IMG/VR virus record: IMGVR_UViG_3300047476_002078
Location: 1 to 64,000 of that record
Direction: 5' to 3' (one strand)
DNA length: 64,000 bases
In this document: positions 14,655 to 56,923 of the stretch, in pieces
How the letters are laid out: each line of letters begins with the position of its first letter
Numbering within the stretch: the first letter of the stretch is position 1
Made by a program: the position numbers and the translations under genes
The notes under the pieces: model-generated
The model's input: only the letters and a program-made list of their open reading frames with translations
Database searches by the model: none
Told to the model about the DNA's origin: nothing

Positions 14655-14742
14655 TAATTTACCTCTAACATATTTATAGCTAAAAAATTATAAAAATTTT
14701 ATGGCTTTATCCATATATATTTATTAGGATATTTTTACGGAG

Positions 14743-15084
14743 GTGTCTATGAGTTTTATGAACAGGATACGTAAAGAGGCTCTTAGTGATGAGGAGCTTA
14801 TCAAAATTCGAGAAAGCGAGCTTCTTTTTAACGAAAATCGTTACGGTAATAACGTACCAAAAGAAGAAATAGAAGAAGATAATAGATGCCGTGAGGTTCT
14901 ATCTGGTATTAAAGCACAAGCTGAATCTTTGTTGAGTGATACAGATACTTTAGAAATAAACATTAAAAAAATAGAAGATAATCTACAAAATGTTACGGTT
15001 TCAGGAACTTCTAATCAAGATTATGACGAAATTATTCTTTCAGTCGATGAAGGTAAAGTTATTTTTAAAATAACACCAAATTAA
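14743..15084 (+). CDS. Hypothetical acidic protein with RIRKEA leader
   Basis: RBS GGAGGT; start is probably the ATG at 14749. Confidence 0.6.
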   Translation: MSMSFMNRIRKEALSDEELIKIRESELLFNENRYGNNVPKEEIEEDNRCREVLSGIKAQAESLLSDTDTLEINIKKIEDNLQNVTVSGTSNQDYDEIILSVDEGKVIFKITPN

Positions 15085-15413
15085 ATTGAAAAAGATTCAC
15101 CGCAACCACAGGTATTTTTGGCATTATGGTTTTCAAATACAAAACCTTTTCCATTAAGACCGTCTTTAAAGTCAAGTGTGACTCCTTTCAGATAGATAGC
15201 GGATTTAGGGTCTATTAAGATGGAGATGTTATCCAAACTTAATATGTTGTCTTTTTCTTTAAACTGAGAAAATTCTATTTTATAAGATAACCCAGAACAT
15301 CCTCCTCCTGTTACAGAGATGCGTAAACCCTTTTCGTTGTTCGCATTTTCGGTACTCCAGATGTCTTTTATTTGTTGGATTGCCTTTTCGGTTACTTCAA
15401 TTATGTTGTTCAT
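15081..15413 (-). CDS. iscA: A-type Fe-S carrier protein (IscA/HesB)
   Basis: GGGCSGLSY and TCGCGESF motifs. Confidence 0.93.
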   Translation of the reverse strand: MNNIIEVTEKAIQQIKDIWSTENANNEKGLRISVTGGGCSGLSYKIEFSQFKEKDNILSLDNISILIDPKSAIYLKGVTLDFKDGLNGKGFVFENHNAKNTCGCGESFSI

Positions 15414-16096
15414 AAAACCTCTTTATCAATTATCGCCGTAATTTGCTCTTTTGATAGAGTTCCATCTATTTCAAAAACTTTAGGAAAATTTGTAGATAAT
15501 TCAATTTCTCCTAAAAAGGGACAGTTTAATTTATTTATAGCAAATTTTTGTCCGTTTATGCTATTCAAAGAGTTTAAATCCTTAGAAATTCTTAAAAAAT
15601 TTTCTCTTACTTTTTCCGTAAAACTGTCACCTTTAGATTCTTCTCTCGTGGAAGAAGTATCACCTCTTTCAAACCTTCGTTTTGTAGCTTCTTCGATAGG
15701 TATATCTAAGAAAAAAATATGAGAGGGGAAAACCTGAATAGCAAATTTTAACAGGTTCCAAATGTCTTGAACTTTGTTTCCACAAGCTACACCATAAGCT
15801 AAACCGCTCATAAATGATCTGTCTGAAACAACAAAATAACCGTCTTCTAAAAGCTGTTTTACCTTGGCGGTATGTTCGGCTCGATCAGCTTGCATTAGCA
15901 GTTCCAATGATGCTGGAGATATTTTTTCATGGCTTAAAACAAAATCTCGAACTTTTAAATTTATCAAAGGGCTTCCGGGTTCTCTAGTCCAAATTGCTTT
16001 GTGCCCTGAATTGATTAATCTTTTTACTAAATTTTCACTGTGACTTGATTTACCACACCCGTCGATTCCTTCAAACACGATATATTTGTTTTCCAT
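15410..16096 (-). CDS. tmk: Thymidylate kinase
   Basis: FEGIDGCGKS, TREPG, QADRAEH and SDRSFMS..AY motifs. Confidence 0.93.
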   Translation of the reverse strand: MENKYIVFEGIDGCGKSSHSENLVKRLINSGHKAIWTREPGSPLINLKVRDFVLSHEKISPASLELLMQADRAEHTAKVKQLLEDGYFVVSDRSFMSGLAYGVACGNKVQDIWNLLKFAIQVFPSHIFFLDIPIEEATKRRFERGDTSSTREESKGDSFTEKVRENFLRISKDLNSLNSINGQKFAINKLNCPFLGEIELSTNFPKVFEIDGTLSKEQITAIIDKEVL

Positions 16097-16167
16097 AAAT
16101 CCCCTTTTACGGAAAAAGTTTAAAATAATGTGTTGGAATTTTCAAACGAATAGTATAATTTGATTTT

Positions 16168-16809
16168 ATGATTAGTATTATTACAAGCGTAAATGACCAA
16201 GAGCAATATGAACAATTTATGATGCCTAGTATGAACAGGCTTCAGAAATTTCTTATGGATTCTAATCTTCCTACTCTGGATATAGTAAAAGTTTCTGGTT
16301 CAGAGTCTATCGGCAAGAATTACAATGAAGGCATAAGAAAAGCCATCTACAAGGTAAAAGTTTTTATTCACCAAGATGTAGATATGCTAGAAATAGATTG
16401 GGCTTTTAAACTTCTAAAAATTTTTGCTGATTACCCAGATGTGGGATTAGTAGGATTGGTAGGAACCGTAAATTTTCCGAATAGAGGGTTTTGGTGGACT
16501 TCTGGAAGAGAATTTATTCGTGGAGAGCTTTGGTCAGGAAAAGAAAAAGCTGATTGGACTTTTTTGCCTGTGATTGCCCCGACAACAGTAGAATGTATTG
16601 ATGGCTTTTTCATGGCAACAAATAGAGACATTCTATGGGATGAGGACATTAAAGGTTTTCATTGTTATGATATGGACTACTCTCGTACAATTACTAAAAA
16701 CGGTTTAAAAATAATGGTCATGCCTCATAAATCTTGGCATATTGGAGAAATTCGAGAGGCAAAACACGAGCATTTATTTGAAACTTACTATAAAAAATGG
16801 AATTTATGA
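16168..16809 (+). CDS. GT-A glycosyltransferase-like protein
   Basis: YNEGI..A, FIHQD, IDGFFMA and FHCYDMD motifs. Confidence 0.8.
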   Translation: MISIITSVNDQEQYEQFMMPSMNRLQKFLMDSNLPTLDIVKVSGSESIGKNYNEGIRKAIYKVKVFIHQDVDMLEIDWAFKLLKIFADYPDVGLVGLVGTVNFPNRGFWWTSGREFIRGELWSGKEKADWTFLPVIAPTTVECIDGFFMATNRDILWDEDIKGFHCYDMDYSRTITKNGLKIMVMPHKSWHIGEIREAKHEHLFETYYKKWNL

Positions 16810-17717
16810 AAATAGCAGTTTTTTGGGGTGGAAGACATACTTTGCCCGGTGCTTGCGATGAAAATACTTGGTACAGTTTTTACAATTCTGGTTGGAAGTA
16901 CGGATTTGAAAGTTTAGGGCACTCTGTACATTATTTTTCATGGGATGACCATGAAGATAGATCAGGATATGATCTTTACATTTACGCTCCGGGGTTTTTA
17001 ACAAATTTAACTTATCATCCAAAAATTTATCATCCGAACGTATTTTTTACTGAAGAGGCTAGTTGTGCAGTTTCTTGGGCGGCTTCTCACAGTTACTACT
17101 ACGATGCGGTCACATTTCTTGATTACATAAATTGGAAAGCTGTAAAACATATAGGCGTTAATAACGCATATTGGGTGCCCGGTGCAGTTGACCCGACAGT
17201 GTTTAAAAATTTGAATCAGGAAAGAATATATAATACAGCGTTTTTAGGTTCTTATGATGATAATGTTAAAATCATTAATGGTAAGACACGATTAGATTTT
17301 ATACGAGCTATTGACGCTCATAATAAACCTTCAATGGTAGCCAGAGGTTATTACGCATTTGAAGCTAATAAGATTTGGAATGTTACTAAAATAGGTGTCG
17401 ATGTACCGATAGTTGAGTTCTGTTCTTTTAGACTTTTTCAAATAATTGCGTCAGGGGCTTTCTGTATTACTCGAAAAACTAGATTGGATAGTGGAATATC
17501 ACAACTTCTTGAACCTGATATGTATGACACTTATAACGACATAGATGATCTTGTTTTTAATGTAGCTCCGTATTGGATAGTTAAAGACCAAAAACGGGAG
17601 AAACTATGTAAGACTGCTCAAGAGTTTGTTCTCCAAAATCATACTTTTAAAAATCGTGCAGAGCAAATATTAAAAATAGCTGGTCTTATGGAAGGAAAAA
17701 TTCCGTATCAAGGATAA
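16806..17717 (+). CDS. GT-B glycosyltransferase (CgeB-like C-terminal domain)
   Basis: AVDPTVF, AFLGS, RLFQIIASGAF and HTFKNRAEQIL motifs; ATGA overlap gives a start at 16806. Confidence 0.78.
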   Translation: MKIAVFWGGRHTLPGACDENTWYSFYNSGWKYGFESLGHSVHYFSWDDHEDRSGYDLYIYAPGFLTNLTYHPKIYHPNVFFTEEASCAVSWAASHSYYYDAVTFLDYINWKAVKHIGVNNAYWVPGAVDPTVFKNLNQERIYNTAFLGSYDDNVKIINGKTRLDFIRAIDAHNKPSMVARGYYAFEANKIWNVTKIGVDVPIVEFCSFRLFQIIASGAFCITRKTRLDSGISQLLEPDMYDTYNDIDDLVFNVAPYWIVKDQKREKLCKTAQEFVLQNHTFKNRAEQILKIAGLMEGKIPYQG

Positions 17718-17722
17718 CTATA

Positions 17723-17953
17723 ATGGCATCTCCTTATGAAAAAGAGGTAATTGATATTCTTTTAAAAACAAAAGGAAAAGCTGTGTGCTTTTTGGTTTTG
17801 GATGGCTCAAAAGGAACTAGCTTTGAAGTAAGGTCTGTTGATGAAAAATACATGCGGAGTCTGCCAAAAATTTTAATAGAAATAGCCAGTAAAATTGAAG
17901 GCGAATTGAACGAAAAAGATTTAAAGAAGAAAATGGAAAATTTAGATGTTTGA
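17723..17953 (+). CDS. Hypothetical protein
   Basis: 76-aa ORF inside the operon. Confidence 0.6.
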   Translation: MASPYEKEVIDILLKTKGKAVCFLVLDGSKGTSFEVRSVDEKYMRSLPKILIEIASKIEGELNEKDLKKKMENLDV

Positions 17954-18575
17954 TCTTAATTATCAAAACCCTTATAATCCTTACGTAACTAAGACTCAAG
18001 AATTTGGAAATTTTAAATTTGAGAGTTTATCCATAGAAGGTTTAGTTATTATTACTCCTAAAATCTATGGAGACAGTAGAGGCTACTTCCTTGAAACTTA
18101 TAATGAATACGCATTTTTAAACGCTGGGATACCTACACAGTTTAAACAAGATAATCAAAGTTATTCAAGTAAAGGTGTACTTAGAGGGATGCACATACAA
18201 AACCCTACCTTTCAAGGAAAGCTTGTAAGATGTAATAGCGGATTAGTTTATGATGTTGCAATTGATTTAAGAAAAGGTAGTAAAACTTTTGGTCATTTTG
18301 CTGGAATTTTATTAGACCCGAAAATTAAAAATATGTTCTATGTTCCTGAAGGATTTGCACACGGGTTTTTAGCTTTAGAAGATTCTGAGTTTGTTTATAA
18401 ATGCTCTGAAACTTGGAAACCTAACGAAGACCTCACGGTTTCTTATGATTGTTTTGGTGCTCCTTGGTTAGATATTGCGAATAAATACGATATTTCAGAA
18501 TTTTTAACTTCTGTTAAAGACCGCCAAAATGCTATTAGTGTTGAACAATATCGAGTAATGTACTGCTTGGAGTAA
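17946..18575 (+). CDS. rfbC: dTDP-4-dehydrorhamnose 3,5-epimerase
   Basis: DSRGYFLETY, QDNQSYS..GVLRGMH, DVAIDLR and YVPEGFAHGF motifs. Confidence 0.92.
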   Translation: MFDLNYQNPYNPYVTKTQEFGNFKFESLSIEGLVIITPKIYGDSRGYFLETYNEYAFLNAGIPTQFKQDNQSYSSKGVLRGMHIQNPTFQGKLVRCNSGLVYDVAIDLRKGSKTFGHFAGILLDPKIKNMFYVPEGFAHGFLALEDSEFVYKCSETWKPNEDLTVSYDCFGAPWLDIANKYDISEFLTSVKDRQNAISVEQYRVMYCLE

Positions 18576-18580
18576 AGTGT

Positions 18581-18982
18581 GTGAATAAACTTCATAAGCT
18601 CACAATCAAAAAATTGATAAAATTGTGTTCACCTAGTTTAAGAAGTTTAAAATGGGAATTTACGACAATGACCCATGAACAAAAAATTATTTCAGTTTTA
18701 GAAGTTATATGTTTTGAAATTTTTAAGAGAAACAAAGATAAGATTTCAAGTTTAAAATTTTCAGATTATATTAAAAACGAACCTTACCTTGACCATTATT
18801 TGTTAAAACTTTGCAAAGAACTGGACAATAAAAAAACTGACAAAATAAAAAAGCCCAAACAAAAAACTAAAAAATTCGGTATTTTTGACGTAACTAAACT
18901 TCAAAAGAAAAAAGACGCAAATTTAGATATTAAACCAAAAATATTGTCAAAAAAAGAAGCCTTCACAGATTTTGATGAATAG
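18581..18982 (+). CDS. Hypothetical basic protein
   Basis: 133-aa ORF, GTG start. Confidence 0.5.
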   Translation: MNKLHKLTIKKLIKLCSPSLRSLKWEFTTMTHEQKIISVLEVICFEIFKRNKDKISSLKFSDYIKNEPYLDHYLLKLCKELDNKKTDKIKKPKQKTKKFGIFDVTKLQKKKDANLDIKPKILSKKEAFTDFDE

Positions 18983-18984
18983 TA

Positions 18985-19024
18985 TCAATTACTTGCGATC
19001 ATTAGTGGATTCGGTATAGCCTTT
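18985..19024 (+). promoter_or_regulatory. Bipartite conserved element, copy 1 (TCAATTACTT-N10-GTGGAWTCGGTATAGCCTTT)
   Basis: Matches 48358..48397 (minus strand) at 10/10 and 19/20 in exact register; ends 11 nt before the helicase ATG. Confidence 0.8.
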
Positions 19025-19035
19025 GAGAGGTTAGA

Positions 19036-21279
19036 ATGAAATCCAACAAAATTGAAAATAAAATTATTGAGACAACTGCTTGGTACGCCAAAACTTTTAA
19101 AGAAAGTCACGGCACTTCCTACGCTTTTAGAAATTTTAAAGTTCTAAAATTTTTAGGGGAAACCTCAAAAGCTTATCATGTTGATGTAGAGTTTTTTTCA
19201 GGTATCTCTTGCACTTGCGGAGTCTGCGGAAGGATTCTATCGAACGCAGTTTCTAAAGCGACTGGAATTGGTCCCGTTTGTGCTGAAAAAATAGGTCTTC
19301 CAAGACCAACACTAGAGTCGGCAAAAGAAACCGTTAAATTAATGGAATCTTTATCACAACAACAAGGTCAATTTACAAGTATTTGGATTCCAAAATCACA
19401 AATTAAAAGAATCGTAGGTGAAGACGGACAAATAATCGAAGGAGACTCTCCTGAATCTGAAAATGATTCAGAAAAAGTAGAAGTTAAATTAGAACATGAG
19501 ATAAAAGTTTCAGGTCAAGAAGTTACTTTCAAATTTAAAGGCGGAGATTTCCAAAATATTTTGAATAAGATGCGTTCAATGAACGGTAAGTGGGATGCTT
19601 CTTCTAAGTCATGGGTAGTATCTCTACAAAATGTAAAAAAAGAATCAAACTCCCTTAAACTTTTAGGATTTAATTTTGATTTAAGCGTGGAAGATGCAGA
19701 AGTCGAAAAGCCTTTGATGCAAATATCCATTGAAGATGATACTGCAATTATCAATTCACCTTATAACTCTCAATTGGTTAATTTTTTCAGAAATAACTCA
19801 GGGTTTATTTATAACGCTTCAAATCACTCAAGAAAGATTAACATTATTTCAGGAGCAGAGACTCTAAAAAAACTTATAGAATTTGCAAAGAATATAGGAT
19901 TTGAAGTTGATGAATCTATAAGCTCTCACCTTGAGGATTTAAAACAAAAGAAAATCGAACTTGAAGCAACAAAAAAAGATTTCACGATTGATCTAAATCT
20001 TGGAATGAAGGTTAAACCATACCCATATCAAATGGCAGGAATTAAGTTCATTGATCTTGCTAACGGCAGAGCAATTGTTGGAGATGAGATGGGTCTTGGA
20101 AAAACTATGCAGGCTTTAGGATGGGTAGCTTGGAGAAAAAAGAAAGCTCTTGTTATTTGTCCTAATTCTTATAAACTCGGTTGGGCTAGAGAGATAACTA
20201 AGTTCACAAATTGCACTAGCCAAGTTTTAGGAAGTAAAAATGTTGAATTTGAGCAATCTGATTTTACGATTATCAACTATGAAAATATTAAAAAACATGA
20301 TTTTTCAAAATTAAATTACGATACAGTTATTATTGATGAATCTCATAAAATTAAAAATTCTAAAACACAAAGATTCGAGTCTTGTGATAAAATTGTATCC
20401 AAATCAAAACATGTAATTTTGCTGACAGGTACAGCGATTGTTAATAGACCTGTTGAATTTTACACACAGCTTAAAATGGTTTCACCTTCATTAGTCGGTT
20501 CTTATGGTTCTTATACTGCTAAATTTTGTGGAGGTCACAATAACGGTTACGGTTGGGATACTAATGGGGCTACGAACTTGGATGAGTTAAGCAAACTTAT
20601 TTCTCCTATCTACCTTCGCAGGATTAAATCAGAAGTTCTTACTGAGTTACCTTCAAAAATTCATCAAGATATAATGATTGAAGGGGTTAAAGTAAAATTA
20701 AATAGACATTCAAAAAACGCTCTTGATGAAATTAATAATCTGAAAATTGAGTTAGCTAAGGAAAAAGTTAGTCATACAATCGAGTTCGTCGAAAACATGG
20801 TTGAGAATGGGGACAAGGTAATTGTTTTCAGTGACTATATTGAGACTGCTAAAAGTATAGCAGATGCTCTTGGAGAAAAAGCTGTATGCTATTTAAGTGA
20901 ACTTTCAACAGAAGAAAGATTCGAGATTGAAAAGAAATTTCAAGAAGATGAAAATGTAAGAGTTTTTGTCGCCACTATGAAAGTCGCAGGGGTAGCACTT
21001 ACTTTAACGGCAGCTAACAAAGTATGTTTTAATGATCTTCCGTGGACTCCGGGCGATTTAAGACAGTGTGAAGATAGAGCACATAGAATCGGTCAAAAAA
21101 ATTCAGTAAATGTTTACAAGATGGTAGCTGAAGGAACGCTGGACGAGTACATTAATGATCTTCTAAACGACAAAATACGTATTCTTGATGCGGTACTTGA
21201 TGGAAAAGAAATTTCGTCTTCTGATAGAGCTATCTTAGATTTATCAATAGAATCAAAGCTTTGTAATATGGTGCGTTAA
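19036..21279 (+). CDS. SNF2-family helicase with N-terminal zinc finger and HARP-like region
   Basis: CGVCGRIL..S.ATGIGPVC; GDEMGLGKT, IIDESH, LLTGT and QCEDRAHRIGQ motifs. Confidence 0.9.
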   Translation: MKSNKIENKIIETTAWYAKTFKESHGTSYAFRNFKVLKFLGETSKAYHVDVEFFSGISCTCGVCGRILSNAVSKATGIGPVCAEKIGLPRPTLESAKETVKLMESLSQQQGQFTSIWIPKSQIKRIVGEDGQIIEGDSPESENDSEKVEVKLEHEIKVSGQEVTFKFKGGDFQNILNKMRSMNGKWDASSKSWVVSLQNVKKESNSLKLLGFNFDLSVEDAEVEKPLMQISIEDDTAIINSPYNSQLVNFFRNNSGFIYNASNHSRKINIISGAETLKKLIEFAKNIGFEVDESISSHLEDLKQKKIELEATKKDFTIDLNLGMKVKPYPYQMAGIKFIDLANGRAIVGDEMGLGKTMQALGWVAWRKKKALVICPNSYKLGWAREITKFTNCTSQVLGSKNVEFEQSDFTIINYENIKKHDFSKLNYDTVIIDESHKIKNSKTQRFESCDKIVSKSKHVILLTGTAIVNRPVEFYTQLKMVSPSLVGSYGSYTAKFCGGHNNGYGWDTNGATNLDELSKLISPIYLRRIKSEVLTELPSKIHQDIMIEGVKVKLNRHSKNALDEINNLKIELAKEKVSHTIEFVENMVENGDKVIVFSDYIETAKSIADALGEKAVCYLSELSTEERFEIEKKFQEDENVRVFVATMKVAGVALTLTAANKVCFNDLPWTPGDLRQCEDRAHRIGQKNSVNVYKMVAEGTLDEYINDLLNDKIRILDAVLDGKEISSSDRAILDLSIESKLCNMVR

Positions 21280-21384
21280 TACTCTAATAAATACATATTA
21301 GTGATCGGTCCATGGGAAGCAAGGAAGCTATTATTTGTATATGAACATATTTGAATTCACCCTTTAACTCTTAGGAGAATTCGT

Positions 21385-21642
21385 ATGGAAGTCATCTTAG
21401 TCGCAATTAAACCTTTAATTGAAACATTTGCAGGGAATAACGGTGTTGTTCTTCAGGTAGTATCAATCATCGGAGCTTTAAGAATTTTATTAAAGCCTGC
21501 CATGACTCTTGCTCAAGCTGTAGTTGATGTTACTCCGTCTCAAACGGATAACGAAAAACTAAACAAGTTTTTAGAAAGCAAGACTTATGCAACAATCGTT
21601 TATGTTTTAGATTGGTTCGGTTCAATTAAATTACGTAAGTAA
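21385..21642 (+). CDS. Small membrane protein (holin-like)
   Basis: 85 aa with hydrophobic segments and a basic C-terminus; RBS AGGAG. Confidence 0.45.
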   Translation: MEVILVAIKPLIETFAGNNGVVLQVVSIIGALRILLKPAMTLAQAVVDVTPSQTDNEKLNKFLESKTYATIVYVLDWFGSIKLRK

Positions 21643-21663
21643 TTGTAAATTCAAAAGGATTTG

Positions 21664-21696
21664 AAAAAGGGGAGTATTTTTTACTCCCCTTTTTTT
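21664..21696 (+). terminator. Rho-independent terminator
   Basis: aaaaaggggagta / tactccccttttt stem followed by a T-run. Confidence 0.85.
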
Positions 21697-21752
21697 ATAC
21701 ATAATCCCTTAATTTTCTACAATATAGGTAAGTTCAATTAAGGAGATTTGAG

Positions 21753-22772: not shown

Positions 22773-22777
22773 ATTAT

Positions 22778-22809
22778 AAGGCGGCAGGTCGTAAAAATCT
22801 GCCGCTTTT
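22778..22809 (+). terminator. Rho-independent terminator
   Basis: gcggcag / ctgccgc stem followed by tttt. Confidence 0.75.
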
Positions 22810-22879
22810 ACCGTAAATTTTACCGTAAAATGAAATTTTATCTATAATCAAAACAACTAACCAAGGACGGAGGTTGTTT

Positions 22880-23635
22880 TTGAGAATAAAATATTTGCTA
22901 TCTAAGTATGATAAAGCTGTTCAAGTTGATAAATCTTTACCAATTCAAAAGCAAACTTTAATAGTATCCCAGCAATTAAAAAGTGTCCGAGACGATTTGT
23001 GCAAAAAGTCTAAAACCTTGAATGATGTCCTCGAAGCACAATACGCTTACATAATATCTTCTTTAAATCATAGAAATAGAATTTGGAAATATGACTACAT
23101 GTCCTTCCCTAGAAGAGTGGGAGAATTATGGGAGTCTTTCTGTAAAGCCGCCTTTTATAATGCACATGATGTAAGACATGTTAATGCCCCTGAATTTAAT
23201 GACATTAAAAAAGAAATAAAAAAATCTATCCCTAAAGAGATATGGCAGATTGTAGGAGAAGTTAATTTAAAAACAGACAGTCTTTTTTATACTGATCGTA
23301 AATTACATGTAATTGACCTTAAATCTAGTTTTAACAGTCATGAAAAAGGTAACATGCAAAGATTAAGGACAGTCGGGGCAGTTTACAAATTATGGAAGCC
23401 TCGCACAAAACTTTTGGTTTTAGTAAGAGAGACAGATAACAGCAATTATTTGGAGCATTTAGAAGAATTTTGGGAAGTAAAATGTGGTAAAGACGCTTAC
23501 AAAACGATTGAAAACTTTACTGGAGTGAATTTACGGAAATGGATTGATCGTAACGTAAATTTTGAAAAACATCTGGATAAAAACTTTTTTATTGACTTAA
23601 AGAAAAATGACCTAGAAAGTTATCTTAACTGGTAA
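22880..23635 (+). CDS. PD-(D/E)xK restriction-endonuclease-like protein
   Basis: GELWE..C, then TDSLF...IDLKSSF (D...D-x-K); GGAGG spacing favours the TTG at 22880. Confidence 0.6.
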   Translation: MRIKYLLSKYDKAVQVDKSLPIQKQTLIVSQQLKSVRDDLCKKSKTLNDVLEAQYAYIISSLNHRNRIWKYDYMSFPRRVGELWESFCKAAFYNAHDVRHVNAPEFNDIKKEIKKSIPKEIWQIVGEVNLKTDSLFYTDRKLHVIDLKSSFNSHEKGNMQRLRTVGAVYKLWKPRTKLLVLVRETDNSNYLEHLEEFWEVKCGKDAYKTIENFTGVNLRKWIDRNVNFEKHLDKNFFIDLKKNDLESYLNW

Positions 23636-23675
23636 AATATAAAATTTTACCGTAAATTTCAAAGGAGTGATTATC

Positions 23676-23972
23676 ATGGCAAAAGAAACCAAAAAGACGG
23701 CAAAAAAACCTAAAACTATGGCAAGCCGTCGAGGAACAGTAACTAAGACAGCTTCAGTTTTTGGGGCTATTGTAAAAACTATTCTTAATACCAAAAAGAA
23801 GACTTTTACATCAACTGAGATTGCTAAAGCCTCTAAAGCCAGCCCACGTCACAGCCGAAGAACTCTAGCTTCTTTAGCTTCTAAAAGCGTTCTAAGAGTG
23901 AAAAAAGGCGAAGCACCATTTGAATACAGTGTTGCCTCTCGTGAAACTCTCAAAAAAATCGTTACTGCTTAA
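23676..23972 (+). CDS. Highly basic winged-helix DNA-binding protein
   Basis: K/R-rich; FTSTEIAKASKASPRHSRRTLASL..VLRVKKG..FEYSV; AGGAG before the ATG at 23676. Confidence 0.65.
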   Translation: MAKETKKTAKKPKTMASRRGTVTKTASVFGAIVKTILNTKKKTFTSTEIAKASKASPRHSRRTLASLASKSVLRVKKGEAPFEYSVASRETLKKIVTA

Positions 23973-24079
23973 ATTAGTCGGGTGTCACATACCTAATCCT
24001 TTGAAATTGTGAGGGTGGCGAGCTATCGCCTCAATTCCTTGATATTTCATAAATTAAATCTCCTTTTGGAGATACAAAA

Positions 24080-36945: not shown

Positions 36946-37641
36946 ATGTTTTACGGTAAATTTGACGTAAATTCTTTTTTTAAAAATGGTCACACCGTCG
37001 GTAAACTTGATGATAATACTTCAGATTATTTGTTGAATTTGATTGAAAAAGAAAAATTTGCACAAGCTGAACAAAAGAATCTATTTTTAGACAATCCAGA
37101 TCACCCAGATGCTAAATTAGAGTATCCTGAAATATGGACAGAAAACGGAAATATCGTACAAGCTTTTTCTCGCCAAAATTACAACCCTGAATTGATACAG
37201 TTTTGGAAAGAATTTTCAGATAGTAACTTAAAATGGTTTAAAGATTATTTTGGCTCATTTGATGATATGACTATGTTAGCTCATAATTTTAAAATTAATA
37301 ATGAGATAGGTTTTCATACAGATTACATTGAAGCTTCTTATTTAGGGGTCATTGTTTATCTTGGGGATAGAAATTTCACGAAAGATGACGGAGGGTATTT
37401 GGAATTAGCTAAGTGCAAAGTAGATAATGAGGGAACGCCTCTAATCGACACAGTTCAAGTATTAAATCAAATTTTGCCTAATCACGGTACAGTGGTTTTT
37501 ATATCTAATACAAATCCTTGTTTCATGCACAGAGTTGTTCCATTAAAGTCTTGTAAAGTAAGAATTTCGCACGCCTGTAGATTCGGTTTTATTGCAAATA
37601 GAGTTAGTAAGAAAAATTTACCGAATCACGGGTATTTATAA
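36946..37641 (+). CDS. 2OG-Fe(II) oxygenase, paralog 4
   Basis: FHTD..IVYL..DGGYL..PNHGTV..MHRV..VRI. Confidence 0.88.
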   Translation: MFYGKFDVNSFFKNGHTVGKLDDNTSDYLLNLIEKEKFAQAEQKNLFLDNPDHPDAKLEYPEIWTENGNIVQAFSRQNYNPELIQFWKEFSDSNLKWFKDYFGSFDDMTMLAHNFKINNEIGFHTDYIEASYLGVIVYLGDRNFTKDDGGYLELAKCKVDNEGTPLIDTVQVLNQILPNHGTVVFISNTNPCFMHRVVPLKSCKVRISHACRFGFIANRVSKKNLPNHGYL

Positions 37642-41462: not shown

Positions 41463-41569
41463 CTTTTCCTCCCTAAATTGAACCGTATTTTAATAATCAT
41501 CAAACTTATTTAATGCTTAATCAAGTTAAAAATGATAGATTTTACCGTAAATATATTTTGCGTGTGGTT

Positions 41570-43091: not shown

Positions 43092-43408
43092 AAAGATCAA
43101 AGGTCTGGATTTCATATTGCCCTGATTTAAAAAATATTAACTCAGAGCCTCTGACTGTAAAATTTGAATTTGATTATGATTATGATTGTTATTTCGTAAG
43201 CATATATAAAGAAAGGCTTCTTTTAAAAGAAACTCCAGTTAATAAACAAAGTGATTATTTAGAATTTGAAGAATTAAAAAAAAGCATTAAGGTTGCAGAT
43301 AACCTCATCCAAGAATTACATTACAAAGAAACACTACTTAAAAAATTATTTCGCAAACTGAAAAATAAGTTAAATGATTGGATATACAATCAATGTGGCA
43401 TGAATTAA
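43088..43408 (+). CDS. Hypothetical protein
   Basis: 106 aa, ATGA overlap. Confidence 0.55.
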   Translation: MKRSKVWISYCPDLKNINSEPLTVKFEFDYDYDCYFVSIYKERLLLKETPVNKQSDYLEFEELKKSIKVADNLIQELHYKETLLKKLFRKLKNKLNDWIYNQCGMN

Positions 43409-43418
43409 TTACGGTAAT

Positions 43419-44766: not shown

Positions 44767-44796
44767 TTGACAGTTTCACCGTAAAATTGATATTCT
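44767..44796 (+). promoter_or_regulatory. Sigma70-like promoter with CCGTAAA in the spacer
   Basis: TTGACA-18-TATTCT with extended TG. Confidence 0.6.
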
Positions 44797-49717: not shown

Positions 49718-49719
49718 TT

Positions 49720-49748
49720 TTGACTTACCGTAAAATACCTTTTAGCGT
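49720..49748 (+). promoter_or_regulatory. Sigma70-like promoter with CCGTAAA in the spacer
   Basis: TTGACT-17-TAGCGT. Confidence 0.5.
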
Positions 49749-50001: not shown

Positions 50002-50874
50002 ATGAAAAAGTTAGTAGTTGTAGATGTATCAAATATGTTTTTTAGGGCTTTCTATGGTGTACCAACACTTTCAAATAAGAAAGGGATGCACACCAACGCC
50101 ATTTTTGGGTTTTTGAAAATGGCACTCAACTTGACAAAAATGAGTCCTGATTATTTTGCATTTTGTATGGAAGGTGGAAGCTCTTTTAGAAAAGATATTT
50201 TTTCAGAATACAAAGGCAATAGAAGTGAATTGCCTGAAGAGTTAAAACAACAACTTCCATATATTCCAAAAGTGATTGAGTCTCTAGGATTTAAACAGAT
50301 TCAACAAAAAACTTTTGAGGCTGACGATATAATTGGCACTTTATCTAAAAAAGCTTCAGAAAGCGGAATTAAAACCATAATCATATCAGGTGATAAAGAT
50401 TTTTCTCAGCTTATAGACGAAAATGTAGAGCTTGTTGATACTATGAGAAACATTACCTACGCTTCAAAAGACGTGTTTTTAAAATACGGGGTAGAGCCTA
50501 AAAATTTCATAGATTATTTGGCTATAGTCGGAGACAGTTCAGATAATATTCCGGGCGTTTCTGGCATAGGGGCGAAAGGGGCAAGCTCGCTTCTAAACTT
50601 GTATAATTCCCTTGAAGGGATTTATGAGAATATTGAAAAGATTAAAGGCAAAAATAAAGAAAAATTAATCGCCTCTAAAGACAACGCCTTTTTGAGTAAA
50701 AGACTAGCAACAATAGTAACAGATGTACCTATTGAAATTAATTGGGAAGACTTTAAAAGAAATCCAATCAACAAAGAACTCATAAAAGAATTAATAGAAG
50801 AGTTAGAATTTACTCAACTTGACTACTTATATAAACCGCAGCCTGAATCTTTAAGCGAGTTAGAATACATGTAA
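50002..50874 (+). CDS. 5'-3' exonuclease (PolI N-terminal/FEN-like, stand-alone)
   Basis: VVDVSNMFFRAF, EYKGNR, EADDIIG, SGDKD and GDSSDNIPGV.GIG motifs. Confidence 0.93.
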   Translation: MKKLVVVDVSNMFFRAFYGVPTLSNKKGMHTNAIFGFLKMALNLTKMSPDYFAFCMEGGSSFRKDIFSEYKGNRSELPEELKQQLPYIPKVIESLGFKQIQQKTFEADDIIGTLSKKASESGIKTIIISGDKDFSQLIDENVELVDTMRNITYASKDVFLKYGVEPKNFIDYLAIVGDSSDNIPGVSGIGAKGASSLLNLYNSLEGIYENIEKIKGKNKEKLIASKDNAFLSKRLATIVTDVPIEINWEDFKRNPINKELIKELIEELEFTQLDYLYKPQPESLSELEYM

Positions 50875-50876: not shown

Positions 50877-50900
50877 TGAAGGGAGTTAAATCTCCCTTCA
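50877..50900. terminator. Bidirectional hairpin
   Basis: tgaagggag-ttaaat-ctcccttca. Confidence 0.7.
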
Positions 50901-51248
50901 TTGCGTGATTGGAATAATTTTCTTACTTTTTTCAGTTTTTGGAATTTCTATCTTTAATACTCCGTCTTTGTATGATGCTTTAATATCATCTGTATTAAGA
51001 TCATTCGCTAGTTTAAAAGATCGTTTAAATTTCCCATAATTAATTTCATTCAAAATAGTTCTGTCTGCTTCTGTTTTTTCTTTTTCATATTCAACAGTCA
51101 AAATATTATTGTTTGTTTCTATGTTGAATTTTTCAGATGAAACTCCGGGCACTTCGGCAAGAATGGATACTTTATCTTTGTAGTCAGTGATGCAAACATC
51201 AAAAGGTTTCACCATTTCATGACGGAAAAAAGAATCTGAATAAAACAT
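50898..51248 (-). CDS. Small heat-shock protein (Hsp20)
   Basis: AEVPGV, EINYGKFKRSF.L and ASYKDGVLKIEIPK motifs. Confidence 0.92.
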   Translation of the reverse strand: MFYSDSFFRHEMVKPFDVCITDYKDKVSILAEVPGVSSEKFNIETNNNILTVEYEKEKTEADRTILNEINYGKFKRSFKLANDLNTDDIKASYKDGVLKIEIPKTEKSKKIIPITQ

Positions 51249-51336
51249 TTTAACCTCCTAAAATTGTTCTTATTTATAAAATGTTTCCGTAATTTAATTT
51301 GTCAAGTGCCTAAAATAAAAATAAGGAATAACTTAT

Positions 51337-51612
51337 ATGAACAAAGAAGAAATTATATCTCTTGCAATGGAACGATTGGGTTGGACTGAAAGAAAAGTTC
51401 GGTCTTGGTATAAAAAAGAAAATAATTGGCTTAAAGGTAACTCTCCTAAAGAGTTAGTTGAAAGAGGTGAATCAGAAATAGTTGTAGAATTTTTAATGTC
51501 ACGGCAAAAAGATTTAGACGAAGATGATAAAGGCGAAGATGTTGAGCCAAAAGAAGAATATGAAGTAGTGTTCAAAAAAGATAAGAAGAAAAAATTATGG
51601 TTTAAACCATAA
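51337..51612 (+). CDS. Stand-alone Xre/MbcA/ParS-type antitoxin C-terminal domain
   Basis: VRSWY..ENNWLKGNSPKELV..GE..IV..FL; acidic/basic tail. Confidence 0.6.
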   Translation: MNKEEIISLAMERLGWTERKVRSWYKKENNWLKGNSPKELVERGESEIVVEFLMSRQKDLDEDDKGEDVEPKEEYEVVFKKDKKKKLWFKP

Positions 51613-51634: not shown

Positions 51635-51673
51635 TTGTTATAGTATTTTCCGTAAAATATAATTTACGGAAAA
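51635..51673 (+). promoter_or_regulatory. Sigma70-like promoter whose -10 is flanked by an 11-bp inverted repeat
   Basis: TTGTTA-17-TATAAT; ttttccgtaaa (51646-51656) / tttacggaaaa (51663-51673). Confidence 0.7.
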
Positions 51674-51682: not shown

Positions 51683-52024
51683 ATGAAAAAAGGAACAGTT
51701 ACAAAAATTTCATTCTTAGATAATCCGCAAGTCCCTGTTGAAAAGGCTTTCGTATTAGAAGGAGAGAAATTTACGGGGTATTTTTCTGAGGAACCTAGAG
51801 TTGGTCAATGCTTTTTACTCACTCAATGTCAGGACGATGTGGCATTTTTTAAAAGCTCTACAGTCAAATCTGTTTTTAAACCAGATACAGAGCAAGATAA
51901 ATTAATTATTCCTTCTCAATTTCAAAATAAAGAAAAACTGAATATTCCAGTTGTTAAAGAAAATGAAACACTTTTTATAACAATGAACTCTTTATACCTT
52001 TTAAGTGATGTGACGGATGCGTAA
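51683..52024 (+). CDS. Hypothetical protein
   Basis: 113 aa, RBS GAGG. Confidence 0.6.
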   Translation: MKKGTVTKISFLDNPQVPVEKAFVLEGEKFTGYFSEEPRVGQCFLLTQCQDDVAFFKSSTVKSVFKPDTEQDKLIIPSQFQNKEKLNIPVVKENETLFITMNSLYLLSDVTDA

Positions 52025-52166
52025 CAAGATTAAAAAACTTCATTTGGTGTCGGTTATTGTATGTTTTTTTGTGCTGGGTAACGCAATTAACAAAAAAGAT
52101 TTTAAGTTAATTGCGTTCACTTCATTTTTTACATTTGTTGGTTTGTACAGATACGTAAGGATTTAA
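52017..52166 (+). CDS. Small membrane protein, not in the track
   Basis: 49 aa with two hydrophobic segments; overlaps the previous stop. Confidence 0.4.
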   Translation: MRNKIKKLHLVSVIVCFFVLGNAINKKDFKLIAFTSFFTFVGLYRYVRI

Positions 52167-52393
52167 AAATCATCTTTTAAAGGATTTTTGTCAGTTCCCA
52201 TTAACCATCCTCTATCTACGCCATATAAATTTACCACGTCAGTAATAAATTGTGCAGAAGCCGATTTAGAACCCTCTTCGATAGCGATATATTCATCTAG
52301 TGGCATAGCGAGTAGAGCACAAACTTGTTCCCGTGTGAATCGGTTGGAAATTCTTTTTGCTCTTATTTTTGCGGCGAAATCTTTCATTTTCAT
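52163..52393 (-). CDS. XRE-family HTH protein
   Basis: KIRAKR..FTREQVCALL..YIAIEEG..YGVDRGWL; AAGGAG before the ATG at 52393. Confidence 0.8.
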   Translation of the reverse strand: MKMKDFAAKIRAKRISNRFTREQVCALLAMPLDEYIAIEEGSKSASAQFITDVVNLYGVDRGWLMGTDKNPLKDDF

Positions 52394-52449
52394 AAATTCT
52401 CCTTTATTTAATTTTATTTTAGAGAAGCATTGATCGAATTGCAAATAAT

Positions 52450-52908
52450 TTGCCTATAATGCTTTACAGTATGGAAGACTTAGATTTATTAAAATTTCTT
52501 TTTCCTATAATTTCTTATTCGATAATCTGTGGCTCTATTTTGGGAATAGAGAGAGAAATAAATAACAAAAAAGCAGGCATTAAAACAAACATATTAATTT
52601 GTTTCGGCTCTGCGTTATTTACAATATGTTCGGTTCTAGTCACAAAAGAAGTGGGGGACCCTTCAAGAGTAATATCTCAAATAGTATCAGGTATAGGTTT
52701 TTTAGGGGCTGGAACGATAATTCGATACAACGACAAAGTATCAGGATTAACAAGTGCTGCAATTATATGGGTAGCTTCTGCTATAGGTATCATGATCGGA
52801 TTAGGTCACGGATTAACAGCGAGTGTCACAACATTTATAATTGTTATAATTCTTATGGTCGTTAGATTTCTTGAAAGAAAATTTATCTATCAAAGAAAAG
52901 ATGATTAG
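52450..52908 (+). CDS. mgtC: MgtC/SapB-family membrane protein (N-terminal domain only)
   Basis: GIERE..K.AGIKT, DPSRVISQIVSGIGFLGAG and GLTSAA.IW motifs; start may be 52459 or 52471. Confidence 0.88.
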   Translation: MPIMLYSMEDLDLLKFLFPIISYSIICGSILGIEREINNKKAGIKTNILICFGSALFTICSVLVTKEVGDPSRVISQIVSGIGFLGAGTIIRYNDKVSGLTSAAIIWVASAIGIMIGLGHGLTASVTTFIIVIILMVVRFLERKFIYQRKDD

Positions 52909-55919: not shown

Positions 55920-56103
55920 TTTTATTTTCCTGATTCCATTTATTTTTAGGACAAGACATATTTTGTAAACGTGCTTTGATTGTCATTACACAGCCACAAA
56001 TACCGCATCGGTTTAGAAATTTTTTGAAGTGTTCGCACTCAGTACATATCGCTAATCTTTGCTCATACTCTTTTTTTAAAACAAAAATCTCTTTAATTTT
56101 CAT
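55903..56103 (-). CDS. Small Cys-rich protein (RL.IC..C..CG.CGC..K..CP.KW type)
   Basis: Conserved Cys spacing. Confidence 0.7.
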   Translation of the reverse strand: MKIKEIFVLKKEYEQRLAICTECEHFKKFLNRCGICGCVMTIKARLQNMSCPKNKWNQENKNALPK

Positions 56104-56333
56104 AGATTTGGTTATTGAGGAAATAATTCTCTGATTTTCATTTATGAAGGGAGTTTACAATAATGTTAATCTGTTTTGTCACAGTTCTTTTGGCTCTTTT
56201 AATTAGACAAGCGTCAGCCCATTCTAAAGGTAATTTCATAAAATGCAACAAAATTATCTCAAAGGTATAAAATTGATATTTTCAAACTATAACTCTTCAG
56301 AATTAATAACTTTTTTAAATCCCTTGAAATAAG

Positions 56334-56516
56334 ATGGACGTTAAAAAGTTTAAAAATGGGGATAAGGTTCAAGTAGTCGCAAGCTCTTGTGGTTACAAAG
56401 GCAAAGGTGAAGTTATTGGACCTGCCTATCTAAAGGCTTATCTGGTAAAAATTGAAGCTGAAGGTTTTAATTCAATCATTCTTGTTAAAGAAGATGAGAT
56501 GAGAAAATTAAAATAA
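56334..56516 (+). CDS. Small KOW/SH3-like protein
   Basis: FKNGDKVQVV..YKG.GEVIG. Confidence 0.6.
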   Translation: MDVKKFKNGDKVQVVASSCGYKGKGEVIGPAYLKAYLVKIEAEGFNSIILVKEDEMRKLK

Positions 56517-56521
56517 AAAAA

Positions 56522-56597
56522 TGGAGCGGGCGAAGGGGTTTGAACCCTCGACATCCAGATTGGAAATCTGGCACTCTACCAACTGAGCTACGCCCGC
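56522..56597 (-). tRNA. trnG: tRNA-Gly(TCC)
   Basis: 76-nt cloverleaf GCGGGCG..., anticodon arm CCAGA-TTTCCAA-TCTGG, T-loop TTCAAAC, encoded CCA. Confidence 0.96.
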
Positions 56598-56619
56598 ATG
56601 GTTTTATTATAGAAAAAAT

Positions 56620-56868
56620 TTATTTTGTAGCAACTATTTTTTGAAAAATATGTTCGCAAACATTTTCGCCCCATTCAACGGGCTTACCACATGTTCCACA
56701 ACGACCAACAGCCGCCATTTTATTACCTTCAGCACAATAACTACAATCGCAATCAACAATCCAATATGGTGAACAATTTTCGGTAGTCATCCAATATTCA
56801 TCGCAGTTTTGACAATACCAATCTATTTTTCCCCAATTTTCCATTAAGACTCCTCTTTCATTTACCAT
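56620..56868 (-). CDS. Cys-rich zinc-ribbon-like protein
   Basis: CQNC, CDCSYC and CGTC motifs. Confidence 0.55.
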   Translation of the reverse strand: MVNERGVLMENWGKIDWYCQNCDEYWMTTENCSPYWIVDCDCSYCAEGNKMAAVGRCGTCGKPVEWGENVCEHIFQKIVATK

Positions 56869-56923
56869 TATAGAGGTAAATTATAAACTTTACTTTACGG
56901 TAAAAACTCGATAGCCTTTTTAA

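What the first reader, a model, noticed from the sequence alone, without database searches (positions are those of the whole stretch)
14734..56900. Recurrent CCGTAA(A/T) motif overlapping promoters in both orientations: candidate operator network
Seen in intergenic or 5' regions: 14734(rc), 16106(rc), 22811 and 22823 (tandem), 23650, 41545, 43409(rc), 44779, 49728, 51287, 51650 and 51663(rc), 56894(rc). It lies in sigma70 spacers (44779, 49728, 51287), just upstream of a -35 (43409), and as a perfect 11-bp inverted pair around a -10 (51646-51673). Rough estimate, assuming ~30% GC: about 6-7 chance hits of the 7-mer in the whole window and under 1 in the small intergenic fraction. Several coding-region hits also exist. 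Inference: binding site for a phage regulator, with the wHTH gene at 23676 or the XRE gene as candidates.
Basis: partly seen in the sequence, partly recalled or inferred. Interest (0 to 1): 0.65.

Follow-up and report, generated by a model that had tools for sequence, protein, structure and literature searches.

The report
Conserved operator-like palindrome in jumbo phage
A short near-palindromic DNA word (TTTAC-C/G-GTAAA) recurs at the promoters of an uncultivated 356-kb freshwater phage and is kept in a related phage, so it is most likely the docking site of one regulator that switches many phage genes together; the regulator itself is not identified.

Summary
CCGTAAW occurs 37 times in the window against 10.0±3.0 in shuffles. 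Twelve hits lie in the 6% intergenic DNA against 1.1±1.05 under an order-2 background. The window is the first 64 kb of a complete 355,874-bp phage genome, and the motif continues to about 280 kb. Its full form is tTTTAC-S-GTAAAAt.

Sites concentrate in promoter-bearing intergenic regions. They show no orientation bias and sit at variable positions: beside a -35, in the spacer, flanking a -10, or in the leader. A related contig (77-78% identical) keeps 7 of 8 intergenic copies in place. In six aligned promoter regions, 42 of 42 motif-core columns are identical against 72% of the other columns, and the -35 and -10 hexamers are conserved beside them.

The best reading is a dispersed operator for a sequence-specific, probably repressing, DNA-binding protein at host-RNAP promoters. 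The binder is open. The XRE protein is unlikely, because it has its own unique conserved palindrome. The winged-helix protein at 23676 is possible: three of the strongest sites in the genome adjoin its gene pair. Against it, its recognition helix is invariant in distant relatives that lack the motif. Coding copies are about 2.5-fold enriched but not conserved.

This is a new member of a known kind, of moderate interest.

The parts
16106..16116 (.). Site CTTTTACGGAAAAAG (score 14.2). It lies between divergent genes: thymidylate kinase 15410-16096 (minus strand) and glycosyltransferase 16168-16809 (plus strand). It is 10 nt upstream of the minus-strand ATG.
22807..22817 (.). First of two tandem perfect sites (score 17.7), 12 bp centre to centre with the next one. 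It is upstream of the 253-aa nuclease-like gene.
   Evidence: Kept in near-identical strain L029 while flanking bases vary. In L024 (wHTH 63%, 253-aa protein 75% identical) two CCGGAA variants occupy the same promoter.
22819..22829 (.). Second tandem perfect site ATTTTACCGTAAAAT (score 18.6, joint best in the genome). It covers the -35 position, 15 bp upstream of TATAAT 22845-22850.
22874..23635 (+). A 253-aa conserved protein, target of the tandem sites. It is possibly a PD-(D/E)xK restriction-endonuclease-like protein (D135, D148-x-K150). Low confidence.
   Evidence: Atlas look-alikes are restriction endonucleases, score 0.91-0.93. Alignment. AF2 pLDDT 69 and no significant fold match. No Pfam or PHROG hit.
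23646..23656 (.). Perfect site ATTTTACCGTAAATT (score 18.4), 9 nt upstream of the Shine-Dalgarno sequence of the wHTH gene.
   Evidence: Kept in L029 and in L030 (82% identical protein). Not kept in L024 or L031.
23676..23972 (+). A 98-aa winged-helix protein with a basic N-terminal tail. It is a candidate regulator, unproven.
   Evidence: Weak Rrf2 hit. AF2 pLDDT 79.6 with H-H-H-wing topology. Foldseek best matches are ArsR, MarR, GntR, CAP and AspA winged helices at E about 4e-3. Recognition helix ASPRHSRRTLA is invariant in 5 homologues.
36950..36960 (.). Perfect site (score 17.2), 54 nt upstream of the 2OG-Fe(II) oxygenase gene 36315-36896 (minus strand).
41541..41551 (.). Perfect site (score 17.7) between 41196-41462 (minus strand) and the plus-strand gene that ends at 42466.
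43408..43418 (.). Site TAATTACGGTAATTT (score 13.7). It abuts -35 TTGACT 43419-43424 of the exonuclease gene 43454-44098.
   Evidence: The site and the -35 are conserved in L127.
44775..44785 (.). Site (score 15.3) inside the spacer of TTGACA 44767-44772 / TG-extended TATTCT 44791-44796. This promoter serves gene 44803-45153.
   Evidence: Conserved in L127.
49724..49734 (.). Site GACTTACCGTAAAAT (score 15.0). It abuts TTGACT 49718-49723 and lies 38 nt upstream of the likely start at 49772 of a small secreted protein.
   Evidence: Identical in L127, which has a second site next to it.
51283..51293 (.). Weaker site ATGTTTCCGTAATTT (score 11.8). It lies between HSP20 50898-51248 (minus strand) and 51337-51612 (plus strand), downstream of the minus-strand TTGACA 51302-51297.
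   Evidence: Identical in L127 and L128.
51646..51656 (.). Left arm of the perfect 11-bp inverted pair, in the spacer of TTGTTA-17-TATAAT. This promoter serves gene 51683-52024.
   Evidence: Conserved in L127 and L129.
51663..51673 (.). Right arm of the pair. It overlaps the last base of the -10 and the start-site region. The 17-bp centre spacing is conserved.
56894..56904 (.). Perfect site (score 16.1), 26 nt upstream of the 82-aa gene 56620-56868 (minus strand).
52163..52393 (-). It is judged a local regulator.
   Evidence: HTH_31 E=1.8e-4 and HTH_3 E=0.006, both below the curated cut-offs. Ortholog in L127.
52441..52453 (.). Palindrome GCAAAT-A-ATTTGC in the XRE/MgtC divergent promoter. It is a different operator, unique in the genome.

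Best explanation
The motif tTTTAC-(C/G)-GTAAAAt is a dispersed operator, the binding site of one sequence-specific DNA-binding protein. About 25-40 intergenic copies lie across the first ~280 kb of a 356-kb phage genome.

The copies overlap sigma70-type promoters read by the host RNA polymerase. They sit against the -35, in the spacer, around the -10, or in the first bases of the transcript. The genes served are DNA-metabolism, DNA-modification and auxiliary genes.

Occupancy would occlude RNA polymerase or block its escape, so that this gene set is switched off together. That would serve either temporal shut-off or a quiescent state.

Shown: the enrichment, the near-palindromic form, the promoter association, the lack of orientation bias, and the conservation in a relative.

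Inferred: that a protein binds the sites, that the effect is repression, and that the protein is phage-encoded. The winged-helix protein at 23676-23972 is the first candidate, at roughly one chance in three.
For: Enrichment:
- Window: 37 against 10.0±3.0.
- Intergenic DNA of the window: 12 against 1.1±1.05 under order 2.
- Genome intergenic DNA: 42 against 10.9 under order 3.
- PWM score of at least 14: 62 against 6.6 simulated, 25 of them in the 5.8% intergenic DNA.

Form:
- The left half TTTA emerges when conditioning only on CCGTAA.
- The centre of TTACNGTAA is C 23, G 22, A 6, T 4.

Place:
- Density is 2.1-2.6 sites per kb in tandem and divergent intergenic regions, against 0.4 (1 site) in convergent ones.
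- Orientation relative to the gene is 22 same against 15 opposite.
- 33 sites lie 0-50 nt upstream of a start codon, against 9.4 expected.
- 9 of 35 strong upstream sigma70-like promoters carry a site between -32 and +25 of the -10. That is 12 site-promoter pairs against about 0.7 in shifted controls.

Conservation in L127 (77-78% identical):
- 7 of 8 intergenic hexamers are kept, against a 37% baseline.
- 42 of 42 core columns are identical against 452 of 628 others, with the -35 and -10 conserved alongside and the 17-bp pair spacing kept.

Other support:
- No phage RNA polymerase was recognised, so these promoters should depend on host RNA polymerase.
- 80 other low-GC phage loci show no such density.
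Against: - No binding, transcription or start-site data exist. No RNA run holds this phage.
- Sigma70-like matches are not themselves enriched in this AT-rich DNA: 66 against 67.4 in shuffles. Promoter calls therefore rest on the best cases and on conservation.
- The motif is not fully symmetric. Imperfect sites keep the CCGTAAA half, 21 with centre C against 4 with centre G.
- Coding DNA is also enriched about 2.5-fold: 92 against 38.6±6 in synonymous shuffles, and 45 against 15 under a frame-aware order-3 model. Those copies are not conserved, 3 of 10 against a 26% baseline. Part of the excess is therefore unexplained.
- The regulator is unknown. The wHTH recognition helix is invariant in relatives that lack the motif.
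Confidence: 0.6

Rival explanations
1. The sites are bound by a host transcription factor. The phage places part of its genes under a host regulon or signal rather than under a regulator of its own.
For: Only a few DNA-binding proteins were recognised in 356 kb, and none is tied to the motif. The best phage candidate is contradicted by comparative data. The site geometry fits equally well.
Against: The host is unknown. No known operator of this sequence was found in the literature search. The three strongest sites cluster at one phage gene pair that includes a wHTH protein, which looks like autoregulation.
Confidence: 0.15
2. The motif is an activator site or a promoter element for a phage-directed form of RNA polymerase, like the T4 MotA box. 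It would mark a temporal promoter class rather than repression.
For: The motif ends in TAAAWT, which resembles a -10 hexamer. At 118138 it lies 18 bp after TTGACC. Non-palindromic copies lean towards the coding strand, 10 against 4. The phage encodes a sigma region-4-like protein at 188546-189178.
Against: There is no fixed distance to any hexamer or to the start codon. Overall there is no orientation bias, 22 against 15. At 44779, 49728, 51650, 80785 and 273154 the motif lies 5-12 bp after a conserved -35, too close for its TAAAWT to serve as the -10. Some copies lie 9-13 nt from the ATG. A different, strictly oriented 16-mer already looks like the phage-specific promoter class.
Confidence: 0.1
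3. The motif belongs to the phage's DNA modification or restriction biology. It would be the target of the nuclease-like 253-aa protein or of the phage C5 methyltransferases. The CpG in the core would act as a methylation-sensitive switch at promoters.
For: Double sites flank the -10 of both C5-methylase genes (76747-77610 on the minus strand, and 80820-81758), and tandem sites lie upstream of the -10 of the nuclease-like gene. The core always contains a CpG, since the centre is S and not W. The relative L024 has TCCGGA/ACCGGA in place of the motif at the nuclease-like gene. The genome shows extreme restriction-site avoidance.
Against: The nuclease assignment is weak: pLDDT 69 and no significant fold match. 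Phages normally avoid rather than accumulate cleavable sites. The promoter-specific placement and conservation are explained without this idea. Methylase specificity cannot be read from sequence with these tools.
Confidence: 0.08
4. The excess is not a functional element. It would be a by-product of composition, codon pairs or the removal of other words, with intergenic hits arising by chance in AT-rich DNA.
For: Coding copies are enriched yet not conserved. Some arise from Thr/Ser-Val-Lys codons in a lysine-rich protein. Palindrome avoidance distorts word statistics, as the CCC-GGA codon pair shows.
Against: Intergenic enrichment survives order-2 and order-3 backgrounds. Intergenic copies are conserved above baseline along with promoter hexamers. 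Convergent regions are nearly empty. The 280-345 kb block shows no coding excess, 6 against 3.9, which a genome-wide bias would not spare.
Confidence: 0.04
5. The inverted pairs act as RNA hairpins, either terminators or translational operators, rather than as DNA sites.
For: Several pairs could fold, for example CCGUAAA-N6-UUUACGG at 51650-51669. Some sites touch the Shine-Dalgarno sequence.
Against: Most sites are single compact palindromes. Pair spacings vary from 12 to 29 bp. No T-run follows the pairs. Only 1 of 58 hits lies in a convergent region. The terminator scan lists none of them.
Confidence: 0.03

Closest known systems
Phage P1 C1 repressor with its many dispersed operators (own knowledge)
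   Same: One specific site is repeated at many promoters across a large phage genome, controlling scattered operons of DNA-metabolism and accessory genes. This phage also has a small tyrosine recombinase, as P1 has Cre.
   Different: P1 operators are asymmetric 17-mers. Here the site is a near-palindromic 11-15-mer. No C1-like protein and no ParB were found, and lysogeny is not shown.
Cluster A mycobacteriophage immunity repressors and 'stoperators' (PMC9283540, PMC6550527)
   Same: Dozens of copies of one short site are spread over the genome, mostly in short intergenic gaps.
   Different: Stoperators are asymmetric, are bound by a monomer, and are oriented with transcription to stop elongation. 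Here there is no orientation bias, and the sites sit on core promoters.
IncP-1 plasmid global regulators KorA/KorB (PMC11790492, PMC2665229)
   Same: The KorB operator TTTAGC-S-GCTAAA is also a 13-bp palindrome with a central C/G and T/A-rich arms, repeated about a dozen times at or near promoters of a mobile element.
   Different: KorB is a ParB-family CTPase clamp. No ParB N-terminal domain is encoded here. The sequence differs, and long-range action is not indicated.
T4 MotA box / sigma appropriation at middle promoters (own knowledge)
   Same: A phage-specific word marks a temporal class of host-RNA-polymerase promoters.
   Different: The MotA box has a fixed position (-30) and a fixed orientation, and it replaces the -35. 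Here the position and orientation vary, and a conserved -35 is present.
Restriction-modification controller (C) proteins and C-boxes (own knowledge)
   Same: A small HTH protein is encoded next to a nuclease-like gene, with paired palindromic sites at the promoter. The methylase genes are also targeted.
   Different: C proteins are XRE-type and are encoded upstream of the nuclease, and C-boxes are local. Here the protein is a winged helix encoded downstream, and the sites number in the dozens genome-wide.

Membership tests
Dispersed repressor-operator regulon of a phage (P1 C1 type) | One specific site is present in many copies across the genome, well above chance. | tested here: met
Dispersed repressor-operator regulon of a phage (P1 C1 type) | Sites overlap core promoters or the start-site region of the controlled genes. 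| tested here: met
   Promoters are predicted and conserved, not mapped.
Dispersed repressor-operator regulon of a phage (P1 C1 type) | The cognate repressor is encoded by the phage and binds the site. | not testable with these tools
   Candidates only: wHTH 23676-23972, sigma-r4-like 188546-189178, HU-like 260540-260986, and GapR-like 273173-273469.
Dispersed repressor-operator regulon of a phage (P1 C1 type) | Temperate or plasmid-prophage life cycle that the repressor maintains. | tested here: inconclusive
   A 184-aa tyrosine recombinase lies at 207241-207795. No ParB was found. No CI-type HTH-S24 repressor was seen.
Cluster A 'stoperator' system | Asymmetric site with one orientation relative to transcription. 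| tested here: not met
   Near-palindromic form. Orientation 22 same against 15 opposite.
KorB/ParB-type global regulator | ParB N-terminal (CTPase) domain protein encoded by the element. | tested here: not met
   PF02195 search of the genome gave no match at E of 0.1 or less, and the controls rang.
KorB/ParB-type global regulator | 13-bp palindromic operator with a central S, repeated near promoters. | tested here: met
   This is a resemblance of form only.
MotA-box-like promoter element | Fixed position and orientation relative to the -10 and the gene. | tested here: not met
Intrinsic terminator / RNA hairpin | GC-rich stem followed by a T-run, placed at gene ends. | tested here: not met
Sigma70-type promoters as the controlled elements | TTGACA-like and TATAAT-like hexamers 16-18 bp apart, conserved in relatives. 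| tested here: met
   Promoters at 43419, 44767 and 51635. The hexamers are conserved in L127 and L129. As a class they are not enriched above shuffles.

The most novel reading that the evidence does not exclude
A giant phage with no recognisable RNA polymerase of its own runs a two-tier programme on host polymerase. One tier is a strictly oriented 16-mer promoter class (GTGGAATCGGTATAGC). The other tier is a set of sigma70-type promoters gated by a compact palindrome whose arms (TTTAC) mimic the -35 element and whose centre always holds a CpG. The gate would be read by an unusual protein and tuned by the phage's own C5 methylases. Candidates for that protein are the tandem sigma-region-4 protein at 188546-189178 and the histone-H1-like winged helix at 23676. 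If true, this would be a methylation-sensitive, -35-mimicking global switch.
Probability: 0.1. Interest if true: 0.8.

Novelty: new member of a known kind. Interest (0 to 1): 0.5.

Why it matters
Gene regulation in uncultivated giant phages is almost unknown. Here sequence alone yields a testable regulon. It comprises a defined 13-15-bp site, about 30 target promoters with named genes, and a short list of candidate binders. The named genes include two C5 methylases, a RecD-like helicase, an exonuclease, a DenV-like glycosylase, HSP20, an SPFH protein, a GapR-like protein and a nuclease-like/wHTH gene pair. If a single protein gates these promoters, it offers three things: a handle on the temporal or quiescent programme of this phage lineage, a compact orthogonal operator/repressor pair for synthetic biology, and a marker for tracing the lineage in lake metagenomes.

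Tried and rejected
- **Relatives of the 253-aa and wHTH proteins in IMG/VR:** none found. A megablast and a tblastn against isolate phages gave no match.
- **SNF2-based search:** it returned only distant phages, with identity of 39% or less. None showed the motif density.
- **Paired perfect sites in other viral contigs:** 14 contigs were found. They lie next to small-terminase genes, a CI/Cro switch or ribonucleotide reductase genes. They share no neighbour with this phage, so they say nothing about the binder.
- **Literature search for the sequence:** only primer and vector noise.
- **Genome-collection scan for the 15-mer:** single scattered hits.
- **Pfam searches of the whole genome:** negative for Sigma70_r2, RNA_pol_Rpb2_6, T7-type RNA polymerase (this search had no positive control), ParB_N, RHH_1, AbrB/MazE and HTH_17. 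No DFDGD motif was found. The one DFDID protein is a glycosyltransferase.
- **Homodimer prediction for the wHTH protein:** no verdict, so it is evidence neither for nor against.
- **Fold search of the 253-aa model:** nothing significant.
- **Sequencing runs:** only DNA runs, kept as contigs. Laying four of them showed strain variation but too little listed detail to score the sites.
- **Bulk family scan of all small ORFs:** left out, to avoid a very long typed list of references.

Full report
**What the window is**

The window is bases 1-64000 of a single 355,874-bp virus record. The record has direct terminal repeats, is rated complete, and has 34% GC. It recurs in freshwater and lake metagenomes from several studies. 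No isolate phage is close to it.

No recognisable RNA polymerase was found:
- No Rpb2_6 and no T7-type family hit. The T7-type search had no positive control.
- No DFDGD motif. The one DFDID protein is a glycosyltransferase.

Genes carry strong Shine-Dalgarno sequences, and some carry textbook TTGACA-17-TATAAT promoters. Transcription by the host polymerase is therefore the working assumption.

**Check of the observation**

- Every listed position is real.
- CCGTAAW occurs 37 times against 10.0±3.0 in shuffles.
- The 11-mer with up to 1 mismatch gives 30 matches against 2.8.
- With ORFs of at least 60 aa as genes, 6.2% of the window is intergenic. It holds 12 hits against 1.10±1.05 under an order-2 model trained on that DNA, maximum 4 in 1000.
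- Genome-wide there are 155 CCGTAAA copies, 42 of them in the 5.8% intergenic DNA. That is 42 against 10.9 under order 3.

**Anatomy of the motif**

Conditioning only on CCGTAA, the bases to the left come out as T-T-T-A and those to the right as A-W-T. The site is therefore tTTTAC-S-GTAAAAt. In TTACNGTAA the centre is C 23, G 22, A 6, T 4, so the core always holds a CpG.

A symmetrised matrix gives:
- 62 sites with score of at least 14, against 6.6 in order-3 simulations, 25 of them intergenic.
- 107 sites with score of at least 12, against 23.4, 37 of them intergenic.

The symmetry is not complete. Imperfect sites keep the CCGTAAA half: 21 with centre C against 4 with centre G.

Sites often come in pairs with centre spacings of 12, 12, 16, 16, 17, 20, 22, 24, 26 and 29 bp. 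This looks like independent units rather than one long operator.

**Where the sites lie**

- Density of CCGTAAW is 2.1-2.6 per kb in tandem and divergent intergenic regions, and 0.4 per kb (one site) in convergent ones.
- Orientation relative to the gene is 22 same against 15 opposite.
- Sites with score of at least 12 pile up 0-50 nt before start codons, 33 against 9.4 expected.
- Of 35 strong sigma70-like promoters placed 10-150 nt upstream of genes, 9 carry a site between -32 and +25 of the -10. That is 12 site-promoter pairs, where shifted controls give about 0.7.

In the window:
- 43408-43418 abuts the -35 TTGACT.
- 44775-44785 lies in a TTGACA / TG-TATTCT spacer.
- 49724-49734 abuts TTGACT.
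- 51646-51656 and 51663-51673 flank TATAAT.
- 22819-22829 covers the -35 position before TATAAT.
- 23646-23656 lies just before the ribosome-binding site of the wHTH gene.

A caution applies. Sigma70-like matches as a class are not above chance in this AT-rich DNA, 66 against 67.4.

**Comparative evidence**

A 13.1-kb ENA contig (L127) is syntenic with window 43.2-57.1 kb at 77-78% nucleotide identity.
- It keeps 7 of the 8 intergenic CCGTAA hexamers, where the baseline for intergenic hexamers is 37%. It keeps only 3 of 10 coding ones, against a baseline of 26%.
- In six aligned promoter regions, 42 of 42 motif-core columns are identical against 452 of 628 others. The conserved blocks are the -35, the site and the -10.
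- The 17-bp spacing of the 51651/51668 pair is kept in L127 and L129.
- Near-identical strains (L029) and an 82% relative (L030) keep the sites at 22.8-23.7 kb while neighbouring bases change.
- Eighty other phage loci, many of them of low GC, show no such density.

**Target genes**

- Both C5 cytosine methylases, a RecD-like helicase and the 113-aa gene 51683 each have two sites around the -10. An SPFH protein and the nuclease-like 253-aa gene have tandem sites just upstream of it.
- An RNase T-type exonuclease, a DenV-like glycosylase, thymidylate kinase, a 2OG-Fe(II) oxygenase, HSP20, a DksA/TraR-type protein, a GapR-like protein, the gene ahead of ribonucleotide reductase, and many small unknown genes.
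- The 280-345 kb block of large genes is almost free of sites.

**Mechanism**

The following features fit a sequence-specific protein, most simply a dimer, that occludes host polymerase:
- a compact near-palindrome;
- no orientation bias;
- variable placement on core promoters;
- frequent doubling around the -10;
- conservation together with the promoter hexamers.

This would be a repressor regulon. Whether it serves temporal shut-off or a quiescent state is open. The phage has a 184-aa tyrosine recombinase but no ParB.

**Who binds**

XRE protein (52163-52393, minus strand):
- It has no motif at its own promoter.
- It sits beside its own perfect palindrome GCAAATAATTTGC (52441-52453). This is unique in the genome and fully conserved in three relatives.
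- I take it for a local regulator of the XRE/MgtC pair.

wHTH protein (23676-23972):
- It folds as a winged helix with a lysine-rich tail (pLDDT 79.6). Its best structural matches are ArsR, MarR, GntR, CAP and AspA domains at E about 4e-3.
- Three of the strongest sites in the genome flank its two-gene unit.
- Against it, its recognition helix ASPRHSRRTLA is invariant down to 55% identity. The GC-rich relatives have either a changed word (TTTCCGGAA / TTTACCGGAAAA in L024) or none (L025, L031) at the same promoters.
- The helix invariance would fit equally well a role at the GGTATAGC-type promoters that all these phages share.

Other DNA-binding proteins lie outside the window:
- a protein with one clear sigma-70 region-4 domain (52 bits) and, by eye, a second tandem copy, next to an antiterminator-like gene;
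- an HU-like protein;
- a GapR-like protein with a site in its own promoter spacer.

A host factor cannot be excluded.

**What remains unexplained**

Coding DNA is enriched too:
- 92 against 38.6±6 under synonymous shuffles. ACCGTAA ranks 4th and CCGTAAA 8th of 8192 words.
- 38 against 15.4 deep inside long genes.
- 45 against 15 in the sense orientation under a frame-aware order-3 model.

These copies are not conserved. Some are plain Thr/Ser-Val-Lys codons. The genome's extreme removal of palindromes distorts word statistics. I treat the coding excess as a weak, partly compositional signal, not as operators.

**Rivals and verdict**

- A promoter element or activator box fails on position and orientation.
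- Hairpins and terminators fail on placement.
- Pure composition fails on conservation.
- A tie to the phage's methylases and nuclease-like protein stays open, at low probability.

The finding is real. Its interpretation as an operator network is the best one. The regulator is unassigned. In kind it joins the known dispersed-operator systems (P1 C1, Cluster A stoperators, KorA/KorB), with a new site in a new lineage.

Noticed in passing
window 19005-19020 (+) and 48362-48377 (-); 35 further copies in G000:C1, mostly 121-156 kb: A second, different intergenic motif, GTGGAATCGGTATAGC, occurs in 37 copies with up to 3 mismatches. It is always on the coding strand. It is followed by ynnGARA, then a Shine-Dalgarno sequence, then the ATG about 20-29 nt later. 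Only 2 copies have a CCGTAAA-type site within 120 nt. Related words stand upstream of the SNF2 gene in relatives L024 (GGTGGAACTGGTATAACC) and L025 (GGTATAGC). This looks like a phage-specific promoter class.
   Followed up: partly
whole genome G000:C1 (window included): Restriction-site avoidance is extreme. 41 of the 64 palindromic hexamers are entirely absent from 356 kb (for example AGATCT, CATATG, ATCGAT and ATGCAT, each expected about 121 times). GCGC and GGCC are absent and CGCG occurs twice. Only 155 of 4032 non-palindromic hexamers are absent. This suggests a host rich in restriction systems.
   Followed up: partly
window 52441-52453: The perfect palindrome GCAAAT-A-ATTTGC lies in the spacer of the divergent XRE/MgtC promoter region. 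It is unique in the genome and fully conserved in L127, L128 and L129 while neighbouring bases vary. It is likely the XRE protein's own operator.
   Followed up: yes
window 12570-27376: A cluster suggests DNA hypermodification. It contains a glycosyltransferase / lumazine-binding / DegT-aminotransferase fusion, thymidylate kinase, two glycosyltransferases, a dTDP-sugar isomerase-like protein, a thymidylate-synthase-family protein and an Fe-S biogenesis protein.
   Followed up: no
window 22874-23972 and loci L024, L025: The gene pair of the 253-aa nuclease-like protein and the 98-aa wHTH protein is conserved in order behind an SNF2 helicase. This holds in phages whose GC content ranges from 33% to 52%.
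   Followed up: partly
G000:C1 187868-189178 (outside window): A transcription module consists of a PHROG 'antiterminator' protein (223 aa) followed by a 210-aa protein. The 210-aa protein has a clear sigma-70 region-4 domain at residues 42-89 and a second similar HTH at about 113-155. No region 2 was found anywhere in the genome.
   Followed up: partly
window 39196-41187, 50898-51248, 52472-52908: Auxiliary genes are present: a PARP-type ADP-ribosyltransferase (663 aa), HSP20 and MgtC. A Lon protease lies at G000:C1 260983-263355.
   Followed up: no
genome-wide, e.g. window 2315, 21048, 22286, 48897, 50550, 54627: CCCGGA occurs 62 times. It is read CCC-GGA (Pro-Gly) on the sense strand or TCC-GGG on the antisense strand in every coding copy but one. 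This makes GCCCGGA the most over-represented coding 7-mer, 31 against 2.3. It is probably a side effect of avoiding CCWGG-type sites.
   Followed up: partly
window 50503-50669: Contig depth in three lake metagenomes spikes 10- to 50-fold over this roughly 170-nt stretch inside gene 50002-50874. The stretch is therefore shared with other, abundant organisms or elements.
   Followed up: no
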